Shown piece by piece: positions 1,668 through 7,600 of a stretch of DNA of 64,000 bases (positions within the stretch are counted from its first letter, which is position 1; every line of letters begins with the position of its first letter). The notes under the pieces are model-generated. The model was not told the origin of the DNA. It saw only the letters and a program-made list of their open reading frames with translations, and searched no databases. This DNA is from Trichoplax adhaerens (Eukaryota; Animalia; Placozoa), in NCBI RefSeq assembly GCF_000150275.1, contig NW_002060946.1, forward strand, positions 4,917,454 through 4,981,453. The letters run 5' to 3'. Made by a program: the position numbers and the translations under genes.

Positions 1668-4600
1668 CTAATTTCCGCCGTAGCCACTTTTAGCTGACTG
1701 TTGGCGAGCATAACCGTCGTATTTTCTTCGTTCAACGTCAGTTCTAATTTCATCTACCAAATCTATGTCTACGTCCTCATGCTGAAATTCAATTTCTTCA
1801 GATAAAATTTCGCCCGCTGCACTATTTCGTAATTCTTGCTCATCCAGATCCATTTGTTGCCGTAACTTGGCTAACATTTGATCTCTATCACTACTGCTGC
1901 CTGTGATGACAGTTTGCTTTGTTTGTACGATGTGACCTTCAGCCGTTACTACAGTATCTTTACTTCTTTTCAGTTTTTCAATTTCTTCCAGAGGTAATCT
2001 TCGCGAGATTTTCTTCTTAATAACAATTTGACCGCCAGGTAATTGAGTCTTTTCGTATGTAACTCCACTTGCTACTTCTGATTCAAAATGCTCGATGACG
2101 TCTTCTCTTCCAATTCCAACCAGTGCAGATTCTAGTTTAACACCAGTGGCATCTCTACCTGATCTAACAGCCCATGTATGTAAAATATTCTGTGCAGCAG
2201 CTGTACTATTTGGTGAGCATTCTGCATCAATTGCTTTTATGTCTGATTCTTTTAACTGCAATTCCCTAGCTAACTGAGGCCAATCGTTACCGATCACTGC
2301 AGCCACGCTAGCAATATTACTCTGATCATCGTTTGACTCGCTATTACCGATACCATGCTCAGTAATTTCTTTAATAGCGACATCCATAGTTTCAGCAAAG
2401 ACTCGATATTCATGGCTGATAGTTACATTACCTTCGGGTCCTTCTCCTTGTGGCAATACAACACCCAAAGTGCACAACATCTGCGATACTGTTCTCCCGT
2501 CAACTTTAGCATCACGCACAAAGGACATTAACCCTTTTGGTGGATCGCTGGGTGTAGTTACACGAACGCTACCATCTAATACGTTCTCGCGATAAGGTTT
2601 GAAATCCATTTGCCATGAAGCAGATTTGGCTTTGATAGGTAATAAATTTCCACTACATTGTATACTAACTCGGCTTCCATCAATGATTGGAACATTTTCC
2701 TTACTTGCAATTTGGACCATCCCTTCGTGAAAATCTAAACTATCATATAGACCATCATTGGTCATGCAGGCAATACGCATGCTAGCTTCTCCAGGCTGAT
2801 AGGAGTTAGCAAAAATTGCTACATTAGCTAAGTAAGGGACGGCAGTTATCTTGCGGTATAATGTTGATCCTTTATCTTTCGCAGTCAAAGCTTGTCGGAC
2901 TTGGATAATCCAATATCTGTTTTAATCAGGAAGATTAATTTCACAAGAGTTATTATTATTGAAATTTAGCATATACTAATCGTTAAATTTTGTTACAATA
3001 GAACATTTACAAATATAAAATATACAATAATATACATGCCAAAATAAATTTCAAATTTTTTACCAACTAATTCGTATTAATTATACCTACCGTGCAAATT
3101 GATTGGTACTAAAAGAAAGTATGCCATTTCCTTCATCAATAATTTCTGTTGAGTCAGTGATATCTTCCCATTGTGGTTGCTTATCGTAAGGGGTTATGCT
3201 TCTCAGTAAGCGGATAGGACTATTAGGATCTGCCTTAGGATGTAATACCAGATCGGGAAGAGTTATCGTTACAGCTTGCTTCAATCGAATTCGAGGCTCC
3301 AATGTCACCACTGGTGTTGCACCAGACACACTAGTTACTGATAAATCATCAGGATAAACCGGTAAGACCTGGATATAAGAATCACTTTCTTTATGAAAGC
3401 ATCCTGGAGGAACATCAACTCTTACGAAGGGAACAAATGAAGAGAAAATTGCACCGCCATCGTTACTTATGTCAGCATCTTCACGACAAATGCGACTAAT
3501 TACGGCAAAGTAAGAGGGGAGACTTTGTGTACTGATGGCAACGTAGTATTCATCGTCGTCGCTGTTTTCATCAATTGGCAACACTCTACAGGACTTACAA
3601 TCACTCCAGCCGTCACCTCTTTCACTACTCATAACACAAATTTCTCGACTATAGCCTTCAATAGCGATATAATAAGGTATTTCGATGCTGACAGGCTTCG
3701 AAAAGTATGTACCTGCTGGACTAATTTCTAACACACGATTTGCCAAAGCTTCAGCGTCTTTTAAATTGGGTTGTATAGTTCGTCCACTATTACCCTTTTT
3801 CTCTAATAATCTGCATTCAATTTTAACCGGCGACTGAACTGAGTTTGGTGGTATTATAATTCTTATGCCAAAACGTGAGCTAATTAATGTACCCCCTTCA
3901 GGACCAACAACCGTACCTTGGTGAGGATTACTAACTTCATCAAATTCCACGTCAATACCTTCAGGTGGTGGTAAATTAGATACACTTTTATGTGAAGCAG
4001 TTTTCTGTGAAGCTTCCGCTTTCGCTTTTTCCGCAGCTAGCATTGCCGCTCTAGCAGCTGCTTCTTCCATATCTTGGTCTTCATCATCGATCAATCGATA
4101 ATCATGAACAACATTTGTAGTAACGGTATTATAAGTTGTAACGCGACTAGCAGGTTTGAGTGCAGGTGTATCTTGACGTCGCCACATTTTACTATTTTCC
4201 GGAGTAGGGACAACAAAAGCTCGACCGGTTTCACCTGGTCCTGCGATCGAATCTCGTATCTTATTTTCAAACATCGAACGACGAGCCGAGAAATCTTGCT
4301 TTTCAGGAGATTCAGGAGTTTCATTAGTATAATTTTCCTCAGGTGGTGGTACTCGTCTTAAAGCAGCCATATCCATAACAATTTCATCTTCTTCAGGAGG
4401 AGGAGGCGGAGGAATAGGTGGTGCATCCTGCTCTTCCGGTAATTCCACTTCACTTATAACATCAACAGGTGGTGGTGGTATAGGAGGAGGAGATGCGTCA
4501 TCACTAGGTCGAGGTGGTACCCGAGGTGGCGATTGATCCTTTCTACCTTTCTTTCTAAAGGAGAAAGTTTTCTTTAGACGTTTCCCGAAACTTGGCTTCT

Positions 4601-7600
4601 TAGTAATCTTAGTACCAGATGGATCCTCGGGAGGTTCTTCAGCTATTGCTCCTAACCTGCTTTCCATGACAGGTTTACTAGTCGAAGGTTGTATTGTATT
4701 TGTAGTAGGACGACTTGACGGCATAGATGTAGATTCAATGATATACACTATGGTGCCATCAGCTCTTTTCATCATTTTATACGGACCTGAGGTAGGCATT
4801 TTGGTCGTTTCTGTAATGTAGACCGTAGTTCCATCTTCTCTTTTTACTTCAGTAATACGATCTTCAGCTGCTGACTGAGGACGATATTGTTGCTCAGTTA
4901 TATACACAATTGTACCATCTTCTCGTCTCATTGCACGGAATTTACCAACAGCAGGCATATACGTACTTTCAGTAATATATGCGACCGTACCGTCAGCCCT
5001 AGTAACCTTCTTGACTGGTGCAGGCATGTATGATTGTTCCCCGTAATATTCAACTGTACCATCTGAGCGTTTCATAGCTTTAAATGGACCTGACGGTGGT
5101 AGATACGTAAACTTCGATATATAAACTACTGAACCATCCGCACGTCTAACAGGTGCCATTCCTTTCGATGCTGGGTCCTGATTTGATGGTGGAAGATTCT
5201 CATCCAAGAAGACAATAACTCCATCATCTCGTCTCATAGCACGATACTTATCATCACTAGGGATATATGTAGTTTCACGAATATAGTATACACTGTTATC
5301 ATCGCGAGTTACTGCTATTATTCGCGGTTCTGGAAGACGTTCATCAAGTTGTTGGCGGTAAATTACAGAACCATCCTCTAACTGAATGGTTTCATGAGGA
5401 CCTTGAGGTTGATAATAGGTTTCTGAATATAGCATATTCTGACCACTGGGTAATTGAACTTCACGCACAACTTCTTCACCAAGATCATTAACCGGTACAT
5501 AATTGACTTCAATAATATAAATAATTGTGCCATCTGGTCGTTTTGATTTACGATAGTTACCTTCAGGTGGTTTAAATGTTGTTTCGGTAATGAGTGTTAA
5601 ACTACCATCACTATGGCGTACTTCGCGAGTTACAGCTTCACCAGCTACTTGATCTTCAGGTAAGTAAGTTACCTCGGTAATATAAACTACACTACCATCA
5701 GGTCTAGTTTCAGTTTTATATTCACCTTCTGGTGGCGGTGCAGTCGATTCGGTAATATAAGTAACACTACCGTCAGCATTAAGAACTTCACGGGTATAAA
5801 CTGTTTCATAGCCATCATCATCGGGAGGCATATAAGTTGTTTCAACAATATAAACAACGGTACCATCAGCTCTTGTTAATACCTTATATTCACCAGATTC
5901 CGGTGGCTGACTCATCTCCGTTACTAGAGTTATGCTACCATCAGCATTTTTGACTTCTCGTGTATCACCACTAACAAAATCCATGGGCAGGTATAAAGTT
6001 TCAATGACATAAAGAACGGTACCATCCTCTAAGCGGACGGTACGATAATCGCCATGACTCGGTTTGATTGTCGTTTCCGTAATATACATTATACTACCAT
6101 CAGCACGAACAAATTCTCTAGCATGCATTATTTCATTTTTGTCACGTCTCTGTCTCATGGATACATAGCGTTCACTCAAGCTAGTGTAGTATCTTTCCAG
6201 ATTCGTTCGATGTAAATCACGCCAATCATTATCTTCTTCTGGATAATAAACGGATACATTGTCAGAAGCATTATCTTCATCATCTACCTTCAACACTTCC
6301 GGTCTTAAATTCATTTCCATAACAGCAGCACTACGCATTTGTGCCATTTGTTCATCGCTCATATATTCTTCCTCTGTATATTGTTGTAATATCCTAATAC
6401 ATTCTTCCTGGTTAGCAAAGTATGCAAGTTGTAAGGCCGTCAAATTACTAGCTGTTCGTAATTGACAATTTGCACTATATTCTCGTGCTAAAGCATCCAC
6501 GATATTTGCGTGTCCTTGCTGAGCTGCCATATGAAGCGGTGTTAGACCGTCTTTAGTTTGATCATTAATGCCAGCACCACGGCAGATTAATAATATTGCA
6601 GTGGCAATATTACCGTAGTAACATGCAACATGTAGTGAAGTATATCCTGCTAATGTTACTGCATTGATTGGTGCTCCATAATCGAGTAATCTAGCTGCCA
6701 TATTGACAAAGTCTTCTTGTGCTGCAAGATGAAGTGGAGTCATGCCATTCTTAGCTGGTATGCCAGTCTCTGCATCGTATTCAATCAATACTTTAACTAT
6801 ATTATCGTAGCCATATTGGGCTGCTAAATGGATAGGGGCAATTCCATTCTAAATCAAGATGTAATTAAGATTTGTATTACTTTCTGTAATCGTTATAAAA
6901 TTTTGAATAAAATCATAGAAAAGAAAATATCAATTGTATAGAGAGCATCCTCTATCGTAATATTTTAGTATTTTATGGTATTAATATTTTTACCCTTGTT
7001 TGTTCATTCGGTAATGCCTTATGTTCTAAGAGTATCTTAACAATCTTCAAGTGTCCTCGTTTACAAGCAATATGCAAAGGTGTAAATCCATTCTAATTAT
7101 AAGACAAGATATTCAAATGCTATAAGTACTGGTAATATATAAGAATAAAATTTTATATATTAATATTTTCAATCATTTGATTACTTTCACTCTGAGATAA
7201 GGGCTTGCGCCATGTCCTAAAAGCAACAACGCTATCTCGACACGATCATAATGTGCAGCGACATGTAGAGGAGTGATCCCGTTCTAAAAGATAAAATTTT
7301 TAAGATAAATTATACACCACTCTAGTAAACTATGACCAAAACTACTTTGACTGTTTAAAATTTAGAAAAGAATATCCAAGAAATTATAATTAATATAGAT
7401 ATAAAATGGTGTATAAAGACATAATGTATTTATCGTACTTTTCCTTCGGCATCTGGTGAAGCAAATTTTTTCAACAGCAGAGATACAATTTTTGTTCTAC
7501 CATGTTTCGTAGCTGTGTGTAATGGCGTATAACCAACCTAAATATAATCATTTCATTGATAAAGAAGATTAACCTATTATATTACGTAGCAGATACAATC

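What the first reader, a model, noticed from the sequence alone, without database searches (positions are those of the whole stretch)
4720..6125. Unrecognised tandem double-beta-hairpin repeat domain inserted between the ANK and ZU5 modules of ankyrin
Seen: nine ~50-aa units (18 half-units) with consensus strand-[R/N]xDG[ST]-strand-YIxE..P, about 470 aa in total, in frame and diverged at the DNA level, so it is an old coding repeat. Established: in vertebrate, fly and worm ankyrins the ANK-ZU5 linker is a short, largely disordered autoinhibitory segment, and the giant neuronal inserts lie between UPA and the death domain. Inference: the xDG turns flanked by alternating hydrophobic residues suggest an elongated beta-meander or beta-zipper. 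This would be an independently evolved 'long ankyrin' spacer or ligand-binding rod. I do not recognise the repeat as any named domain.
Basis: partly seen in the sequence, partly recalled or inferred. Interest (0 to 1): 0.8.

Follow-up and report, generated by a model that had tools for sequence, protein, structure and literature searches.

The report
Beta-hairpin repeat domain in Trichoplax ankyrin
The single ankyrin gene of the placozoan Trichoplax carries a strongly conserved, unnamed domain of 18 beta-hairpins (nine 53-residue modules) between its membrane-binding and spectrin-binding parts, so this ankyrin is lengthened at a different site and by a different kind of sequence than the giant ankyrins of bilaterian animals.

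Summary
Window 4698-6125 (minus strand) encodes nine tandem ~53-residue units, each made of two hairpins. Every unit scores far above its own shuffles against a profile built from the other eight. The units lie inside one 3.76-kb exon (3091-6848) of the Trichoplax adhaerens ankyrin gene, between ANK repeat 24 and ZU5.

The repeat is old. Synonymous sites between units are saturated. It is also under strong constraint: against a second placozoan contig, dN/dS is 0.058, the same as for the ANK repeats and lower than for ZU5.

AlphaFold2 predicts one unit, with the nine units as its alignment, as four beta-strands (pLDDT 86). How the units pack together is unresolved.

No Pfam family, solved-structure sequence or fold search identifies the repeat. 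Only the 13-residue hairpin core resembles other proteins, such as the ZNF143 "15-aa repeats".

The sequence is already public inside the Trichoplax sp. H2 model RDD47015.1. The T. adhaerens model TRIADDRAFT_24276 omits it.

Best reading: a placozoan-specific folded hairpin-repeat array that serves as a structured spacer or binding platform within an 837-residue ANK-ZU5 linker. The domain is well supported; its function is inferred. Expression of this segment was not tested.

The parts
3091..6848 (-). One long coding exon (3758 nt, 1253 codons) of the ankyrin gene. It runs from the last ANK repeats through the linker into ZU5-N and the start of ZU5-C.
   Evidence: Open frame 6848..3090 with acceptor ...TTTAG|AATGG and donor ...CACG|GTAGGT. 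100% identical over 1253 residues to residues 647-1899 of RDD47015.1.
6414..6848 (-). C-terminal ANK repeats of the 24-repeat solenoid.
   Evidence: Pfam Ank, Ank_2, Ank_4 and Ank_5 hits. Aligns with vertebrate ankyrins up to P0060 residues 788-806. dN/dS 0.057 against L010.
6126..6413 (-). Acidic linker segment directly after ANK24, about 96 residues. It is the most constrained part of the exon.
   Evidence: 92.7% amino-acid identity and dN/dS 0.02 against L010. No Pfam hit.
4698..6125 (-). The beta-hairpin repeat domain: nine double units (18 hairpins), 476 residues.
5967..6125 (-). Unit 1 (hairpins 1-2).
   Evidence: Alignment A1. AlphaFold2 with A1 as alignment: pLDDT 85.9, strands 2-6, 12-18, 28-31 and 37-45.
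5799..5966 (-). Unit 2.
   Evidence: Alignment A1. Leave-one-out score 66.7 bits.
5634..5798 (-). Unit 3.
   Evidence: Alignment A1. Leave-one-out score 79.9 bits.
5472..5633 (-). Unit 4.
   Evidence: Alignment A1. Leave-one-out score 71.1 bits.
5325..5471 (-). Unit 5, the most degenerate (SG in place of DG in its first hairpin).
   Evidence: Alignment A1. Leave-one-out score 15.9 bits, against at most 5.7 for shuffles.
5163..5324 (-). Unit 6.
   Evidence: Alignment A1. Leave-one-out score 41.9 bits.
5019..5162 (-). Unit 7.
   Evidence: Alignment A1. Leave-one-out score 61.3 bits.
4860..5018 (-). Unit 8.
   Evidence: Alignment A1. Leave-one-out score 79.3 bits.
4698..4859 (-). Unit 9.
   Evidence: Alignment A1. 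Leave-one-out score 77.3 bits. Units 7-9 have dN/dS 0.024.
4539..4610 (-). Polybasic amphipathic stretch (K/R/F/S-rich) in the post-repeat linker.
   Evidence: Read from the translation. Identical in L010 while its flanks diverge.
4341..4532 (-). Proline-rich segment with two polyproline tracts.
   Evidence: Read from the translation. The tracts are conserved in L010. The surrounding linker has dN/dS 0.23.
3621..3914 (-). ZU5-N domain.
   Evidence: Pfam PF00791, E 1.1e-22, ORF residues 959-1056.
1671..2921 (-). Next exon: remainder of the ZU5-UPA module, the death domain and the C-terminal tail.
   Evidence: Pfam UPA_2 (4e-59) and Death (1.5e-13). Open frame 2921..1671.

Best explanation
SHOWN. 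The segment is a constitutively coded part of the single canonical ankyrin of Trichoplax. It consists of nine tandem ~53-residue modules. Each module is two DG-turn beta-hairpins (strand, R/x-x-D-G-S/T turn, strand Y-I-x-E) joined by a short proline-containing loop. Modules are joined by more variable acidic or proline-containing linkers. The repeat arose by ancient internal duplication. It is conserved between two placozoan lineages as strongly as the ANK repeats themselves. The hairpins change least and the inter-module linkers change most.

INFERRED. The modules are folded four-stranded beta units. The array forms a structured, probably elongated beta-rich segment that turns the usually short, disordered ANK-ZU5 linker into an 837-residue multi-part linker: a conserved acidic segment, the hairpin array, a polybasic stretch, polyproline tracts and a charged segment.

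Most likely function: to set the distance and geometry between the membrane-protein-binding ANK solenoid and the ZU5-ZU5-UPA module, and to offer a repeated, conserved surface for binding partners. Other hairpin arrays, such as MORN repeats and the CPAP G-box, work in this way.
For: Repeat and context:
- Repeat anatomy and statistics.
- Ankyrin context: ANK, ZU5, UPA_2 and Death by Pfam.
- Organism and gene: 100% identity to TRIADDRAFT_24276 over its overlap and to RDD47015.1 'Ankyrin-3' over the whole exon. Motifs of the published Tadh ankyrin model lie upstream on the same strand.
- The frame is open for 1253 codons and has canonical splice sites.
- The duplication is ancient: pS 0.70 against pN 0.46 between units.

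Constraint against the second placozoan contig L010 (82% nucleotide identity; the intron does not align):
- All 18 hairpins are kept and there is a single 1-residue indel within the array.
- dN/dS is 0.058 for the repeat (dS 0.74), 0.057 for ANK, 0.076 for ZU5 and 0.17 for the post-repeat linker.
- Amino-acid differences are 5.2% in hairpins, 9.9% in intra-module loops and 15.2% in inter-module linkers.

Structure:
- AlphaFold2 of one unit with the nine units as its alignment gives pLDDT 85.9, pTM 0.61 and four strands.
- The single-sequence run of all 476 residues gives 35 strands in hairpin pairs at the expected places (one hairpin of unit 6 is incomplete), though at pLDDT 38.
- Single hairpins of solved proteins match the core: FecR-like 4m0h and ribosomal uL14.

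Linker length: 837 residues unaligned here, against 139-180 in vertebrate ankyrins.
Against: - The full array was not modelled with any confidence (pLDDT 38). A rod, a closed propeller-like body and beads on a string all remain possible.
- The confident unit model rests on an alignment of only nine paralogous units.
- No partner, localisation or transcript data were examined. The only expression-related support is that the H2 model, which contains the whole exon, came from an evidence-based MAKER prediction (PMC6057997).
- ZU5-N lacks the DAR motif that vertebrate and oyster ankyrins carry at the aligned position. Spectrin linkage in this animal therefore cannot be taken for granted, which weakens the 'membrane-to-spectrin spacer' picture.
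- Distribution beyond placozoans could not be tested on eukaryotic genomes.
Confidence: 0.6

Rival explanations
1. The nine four-stranded modules close into one or two beta-propeller-like globular bodies, each module being a blade. The domain would then be a compact ligand-binding domain rather than a rod.
For: A unit of about 50 residues with four strands is blade-sized. The weak profile hits include RCC1-like and WD40-like repeats (P0004 and P0012). Both faces of the second strand of each hairpin carry hydrophobic residues, which suits face-to-face packing.
Against: No Pfam propeller family (WD40, PD40, RCC1, Kelch) reached even E = 1. Fold searches with the unit gave no blade-specific match: Foldseek E at least 0.8, best VIA Z 4.8. 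The two hairpins of a unit are near-copies of each other, which is unusual for blades. The single-sequence model did not close into a ring, but its confidence is too low to count.
Confidence: 0.15
2. The units are distant members of an existing hairpin-repeat family: the ZNF143/Staf '15-aa repeats', MORN repeats, or the Tcp10_C/G-box. On this reading the domain is not new.
For: The profile of the units hits several ZNF143-type proteins at E about 1e-4 against 1.84 billion proteins. These hits cover two hairpins at a similar ~26-residue spacing. The half-unit profile gives 10-16 bits per ZNF143 repeat. Other weak hits (P0005, P0014, P0016) themselves show sub-threshold Tcp10_C matches.
Against: The similarity is limited to about 13 residues of the hairpin core (profile positions 5-17 of 25). 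MORN and Tcp10_C do not appear at E up to 1-10 for the Trichoplax sequence. The same core also matches unrelated hairpins in uL14 and FecR-like proteins, as expected for a recurrent DG-turn hairpin. The own genome holds no other copy.
Confidence: 0.1
3. The segment is an intrinsically disordered linker, as in vertebrate ankyrins, that carries 18 copies of a short linear motif. It would not be a folded domain.
For: The vertebrate linker at this position is an unstructured autoinhibitory peptide (PMC3663501, PMC5779224). The full-length single-sequence AlphaFold2 model has pLDDT 38.
Against: The composition is T, V, E, Y, I-rich with alternating hydrophobic residues. The unit model reaches pLDDT 86. 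Constraint covers whole hairpins, which differ at 5.2% of residues, and dN/dS is as low as in the ANK repeats. The flanking, plausibly disordered linker evolves three to four times faster.
Confidence: 0.08
4. The segment is not part of the mature protein: it is removed as an internal intron or is an annotation artefact.
For: The public T. adhaerens model TRIADDRAFT_24276 starts downstream of it, at Met916 of the ORF. No RNA data were examined here.
Against: The frame is open for 1253 codons in AT-rich DNA. It is in frame with ANK on one side and ZU5 on the other. dN/dS is 0.058 with dS 0.74 against a second species, in which the true intron does not align at all. The evidence-based H2 gene model contains it (PMC6057997).
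Confidence: 0.03

Closest known systems
MORN repeats (PF02493), as in junctophilins and MORN4
   Same: Tandem beta-hairpins with a period of about 23-25 residues. By my own knowledge of the published structures, they build elongated beta arrays used as spacers and protein-binding modules between a membrane and a cytoskeletal or organelle partner.
   Different: There is no sequence match: MORN is absent from the Pfam results at E up to 1-10. The consensus differs (MORN is YxGxWxxGxxxGxG). Here the hairpins are paired into 53-residue modules separated by proline loops.
CPAP/SAS-4 G-box (Pfam Tcp10_C, PF07202)
   Same: Tandem PDG-turn hairpins. By my own knowledge of the published structures, they form a single-layer extended beta-sheet. 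Some weak hits of the unit profile (P0005, P0014, P0016) have sub-threshold Tcp10_C matches.
   Different: The Trichoplax units themselves give no Tcp10_C hit. The G-box strands follow one another without the 8-14-residue proline loops seen here.
ZNF143/Staf N-terminal '15-aa repeats' (mRNA activation domain; PMC3282657)
   Same: The hairpin core of the form hydrophobic-x-L/R-x-D-G-S/T-x-x-Y-I is shared, at a similar spacing of about 26 residues. The profile hits have E about 1e-4.
   Different: ZNF143 has only four copies, sits in a nuclear transcription factor, and the similarity is limited to about 13 residues. It has no paired-module organisation. No copy occurs outside the ankyrin gene in the Trichoplax genome.
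ANK-ZU5 linker of vertebrate ankyrins (the B-linker; PMC3663501, PMC5779224)
   Same: It occupies the same position in the protein and, as here, is encoded within a single exon.
   Different: The vertebrate linker leaves about 139-180 unaligned residues and is unstructured and autoinhibitory. Here the gap is 837 residues and contains a folded repeat. Whether the conserved acidic segment at 6126-6413 is the counterpart of the autoinhibitory peptide was not tested.
Giant ankyrin inserts of bilaterians (PMC5135030)
   Same: A single long exon of more than 3 kb lengthens an ankyrin.
   Different: The giant exons lie after UPA (vertebrates) or after the death domain (protostomes). From my own knowledge, they encode largely extended or disordered sequence. 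That paper searched placozoans only downstream of UPA and reported no long exon there. The long exon found here lies upstream of UPA: it runs from the last ANK repeats into the ZU5 region.

Membership tests
Canonical ankyrin (ANK24 - ZU5-ZU5-UPA - death domain) | ANK repeats followed by ZU5, UPA and a death domain in one gene, on one strand. | tested here: met
   Pfam hits in the exons at 3090-6788 and 1671-2888. ANK exons lie upstream. The full-length public model P0060 aligns with vertebrate ankyrins over the ANK and ZU5-UPA regions.
Canonical ankyrin (ANK24 - ZU5-ZU5-UPA - death domain) | The DAR motif of ZU5-N. [quoted passage not shown] | tested here: not met
   VDARGG of three vertebrate and one oyster ankyrin aligns with VGPEGG in Trichoplax. 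This bears on function, not on membership of the ankyrin family.
MORN repeat (PF02493) | A match to the Pfam profile. | tested here: not met
   No hit at E up to 1 for the whole region or up to 10 for single units.
Tcp10_C / G-box (PF07202) | A match to the Pfam profile. | tested here: not met
   No hit for the Trichoplax sequence. Only third-party weak hits show it, and below threshold.
Beta-propeller repeats (WD40, PD40, RCC1, Kelch) | A match to a blade profile, or a closed propeller fold. | tested here: inconclusive
   No Pfam match and no blade-specific fold match for the unit. The multi-unit fold could not be modelled, so closure is neither shown nor excluded.
ZNF143/Staf 15-aa repeat | Similarity over the whole repeat and a shared architecture. 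| tested here: not met
   Similarity covers positions 5-17 of the 25-residue half-unit only, at 10-16 bits per copy. The protein context is different.
Giant ankyrin (bilaterian long-exon isoform) | A long exon of more than 3 kb downstream of UPA or the death domain (PMC5135030). | tested here: not met
   The 3758-nt exon lies upstream of UPA: it spans the last ANK repeats, the whole ANK-ZU5 linker, ZU5-N and the start of ZU5-C.
Any solved structure | Sequence or fold similarity to a PDB chain. | tested here: not met
   phmmer found nothing at E up to 1. The profile search found only single-hairpin matches at E 0.035 or worse. Foldseek best E was 0.83. VIA-align best Z was 4.8, which is within the tool's stated background.

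The most novel reading that the evidence does not exclude
Placozoans evolved their own 'long ankyrin'. A lineage-specific, folded hairpin-repeat domain of a family not yet described forms a rigid rod or multivalent docking platform between the ANK solenoid and a ZU5 module that lacks the DAR motif. Ankyrin lengthening would then have arisen independently, at a different site and by structured rather than disordered sequence, in an animal without neurons.
Probability: 0.35. Interest if true: 0.65.

Novelty: new variant of a known kind. Interest (0 to 1): 0.5.

Why it matters
Ankyrin evolution has been framed around the 24 ANK repeats, the ZU5-ZU5-UPA-death core and the bilaterian giant exons. 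Placozoan ankyrin was described as a plain short ankyrin (PMC5135030).

This work shows that placozoan ankyrin carries a 3.76-kb exon and an 837-residue linker. The largest piece of that linker is a domain constrained as tightly as the ANK repeats, so it is doing something specific.

Three things follow:
- It gives a concrete, expressible module (53 residues, or the whole 476-residue array) for structural work on a hairpin repeat that has no family name.
- It offers a handle for asking what ankyrin binds in an animal without nerves or muscles, particularly as the DAR motif is missing.
- It corrects the public T. adhaerens annotation, which splits the gene and drops this part.

Tried and rejected
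Searches that gave nothing useful:
- Word-index protein searches with the repeat found nothing. This held with the exon ORF as frame (candidates of 678-2158 residues) and with the full-length H2 protein as frame (1273-4050 residues).
- The exhaustive profile search of 1.84 billion representatives found no true relative. Its top hit, P0001, is low-complexity junk. The second, P0002 (a 24-residue repeat), scores only 1.1 bits against the half-unit profile.
- These blanks are weaker than they look. The collection's clusters can have a short representative that hides longer members: RDD47015.1 sits under the 733-residue TRIADDRAFT_24276. I therefore dropped my earlier inference that no public protein holds the repeat.
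- ESM Atlas gave no usable hit.
- Tandem Repeats Finder found nothing at the DNA level, as expected for diverged units.
- The 476-residue single-sequence AlphaFold2 model was too poor for a fold search.
- Exact look-ups of TRIADDRAFT_24276 and of the L010 product found nothing on record.
- The supplement of PMC5135030 holds only a truncated copy of the Tadh model. I could not tell whether that model contains the repeat.

- I searched the spliced gene exon by exon, by reference, and did not build or search a joined model. The only full-length sequence used was the public protein that a tool returned.
- I took no contig for human. Having recognised some weak hits as vertebrate ZNF143-type proteins (the named cluster is avian), I used them no further, apart from one of them (P0008) being included in the Pfam scan of weak hits.
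Full report
**What is there**

The window is G000:C1411:4917454-4981453 of a 105.6-Mb assembly in 1414 contigs. The minus strand between about 1671 and 12700 carries an ankyrin gene. Pfam finds ANK repeats, ZU5, UPA_2 and a death domain in the two large open frames, which I searched exon by exon and by reference.

The organism is Trichoplax adhaerens:
- The ZU5-UPA part is 100% identical to TRIADDRAFT_24276.
- Motifs of the Tadh_p55755 ankyrin model of Jegla et al. lie upstream on the same strand.
- The Trichoplax sp. H2 locus is 99.4% identical over 15.7 kb.

The finding lies in one exon, 3091-6848. It has a canonical acceptor and donor and 1253 open codons.

The translation shows 18 half-units with a D-G-S/T turn (S-G in one copy, D-N in another). 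The A-to-B spacing is almost always 25 residues and the B-to-A spacing is 23-31, giving nine double units of 48-56 residues.

Statistical support:
- A profile of eight units scores the ninth at 16-80 bits, against at most 11 bits for shuffles.
- The turn-plus-aromatic pattern occurs 17 times, against 0.26 expected.

There is no DNA-level tandem repeat. Between units, synonymous differences are saturated (pS 0.70) and non-synonymous ones are not (pN 0.46). The duplications are therefore old and the amino-acid pattern has been kept. In its own genome the unit occurs only in this gene.

**It is a constrained protein domain**

One Logan contig, L010 from run SRR30664517, came to light through a cluster member. 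It carries the orthologous exon from another placozoan lineage. It shows 82% nucleotide and 86.8% amino-acid identity, and its intron does not align. I do not know which species this sample is.

All 18 hairpins are present, with one single-residue indel in the array. Regional comparison:

| Region | dN/dS | Other |
|---|---|---|
| Repeat (whole) | 0.058 | dS 0.74; 92.4% amino-acid identity |
| Repeat units 7-9 | 0.024 | |
| ANK repeats | 0.057 | |
| ZU5 region | 0.076 | |
| Post-repeat linker | 0.17 | |

Amino-acid differences fall on 5.2% of hairpin residues, 9.9% of intra-module loop residues and 15.2% of inter-module linker residues. This fits a module made of two hairpins joined by looser linkers.

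**Structure**

AlphaFold2 on the 476 residues alone gives poor confidence (pLDDT 38). It still places 35 strands in hairpin pairs at the expected positions, with one hairpin of unit 6 incomplete.

One unit, with the nine units as its alignment, gives pLDDT 85.9 and pTM 0.61, with four strands at 2-6, 12-18, 28-31 and 37-45. The alignment is shallow and made of paralogues, so this supports a four-stranded module but does not prove it.

Fold searches with the unit return only generic sheets: Foldseek E at least 0.83, and best VIA-align Z 4.8, which is inside the tool's stated background. How the modules pack was not resolved, and both prediction jobs are used.

**Comparison with known families**

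No Pfam family reaches its threshold for the region or for single units. MORN, Tcp10_C, WD40, PD40 and RCC1 do not appear at all. No PDB sequence matches the region. The unit profile finds only single hairpins, in a FecR-like protein and in uL14.

The exhaustive profile search gave 21 weak hits:
- The top hit is low-complexity junk.
- P0002 fails against the half-unit profile.
- The informative hits are ZNF143-type proteins (the named cluster is avian). Their known '15-aa repeats' (PMC3282657) share the 13-residue hairpin core at a similar spacing.
- A few unnamed proteins with PDGT-type hairpins also appear. These have sub-threshold Tcp10_C matches.

I read this as a recurrent DG-turn hairpin motif, not as family membership.

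**How public data treat it**

The T. adhaerens model TRIADDRAFT_24276 begins at an internal methionine, residue 916 of the ORF, and so omits the repeat. The Trichoplax sp. H2 model RDD47015.1 (2314 residues, 'Ankyrin-3') contains the whole exon, 100% identical. That annotation was an evidence-based MAKER prediction using transcriptomes (PMC6057997). The sequence is therefore public but the domain has no name.

Jegla et al. (PMC5135030) looked for long exons only downstream of UPA, and concluded that placozoans lack giant ankyrins. The 3.76-kb exon found here lies upstream of UPA and runs from the last ANK repeats into the ZU5 region.

**Context of the linker**

Against vertebrate ankyrins, the Trichoplax protein aligns through the ANK repeats to residue 788-806 and again from residue 1626. 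That leaves 837 unaligned residues, against 139-180 in the vertebrate proteins. The vertebrate linker is an unstructured autoinhibitory peptide (PMC3663501, PMC5779224).

The Trichoplax linker has five parts:
- a very conserved acidic segment (dN/dS 0.02);
- the hairpin array;
- a perfectly conserved polybasic stretch;
- two polyproline tracts;
- a charged segment.

ZU5-N has GPE where vertebrate and oyster ankyrins have DAR.

**Verdict**

- Shown: a real, ancient, strongly constrained hairpin-repeat segment of nine modules in the ANK-ZU5 linker of placozoan ankyrin, with no named family.
- Inferred: the modules are folded, and the array acts as a structured spacer and repeated binding surface, in the manner of MORN or G-box arrays.
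- Still open: a closed propeller-like fold, a distant link to ZNF143-type repeats, and alternative splicing.
- Limits: searches of protein collections cannot prove absence elsewhere, because short cluster representatives hide longer members. No eukaryotic genome collection was available.

Noticed in passing
window 4539-4610 (-): A polybasic, Phe/Ser-containing stretch of about 24 residues lies in the post-repeat linker. From memory, it resembles the MARCKS effector domain and the adducin tail. It is identical in the second placozoan contig while its flanks diverge, so it may be a membrane, calmodulin or kinase site.
   Followed up: partly
window ~4341-4532 (-): Two polyproline tracts (PPPIPPPP-like) are conserved between the two placozoans. 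They are candidate SH3, WW, EVH1 or profilin binding sites inside the ankyrin linker.
   Followed up: no
window 6126-6413 (-): The acidic segment directly after ANK24 is the most constrained part of the exon (dN/dS 0.02). It may be the counterpart of the vertebrate autoinhibitory linker peptide.
   Followed up: partly
window ~3883-3925 (-): ZU5-N has VGPEGG where three vertebrate and one oyster ankyrin have VDARGG, so the DAR motif is absent. This agrees with another first-stage note on this window.
   Followed up: partly
window 3087-6788 (-), ORF residue 916: The public T. adhaerens gene model TRIADDRAFT_24276 (XP_002112080.1) starts at an internal Met of this exon. The H1 annotation therefore splits the ankyrin gene and omits about 900 coding residues. 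The H2 model RDD47015.1 is continuous.
   Followed up: yes
protein collection (P0026 cluster): A 2314-residue protein is filed under a 733-residue cluster representative. Blank results from the representative-based searches can therefore miss longer members that carry extra domains.
   Followed up: yes
L010:3641-3913: The intron after the long exon is about 270 nt in the second placozoan, against about 170 nt in the window. It does not align at all, which confirms that neutral sites between the two lineages are saturated.
   Followed up: partly
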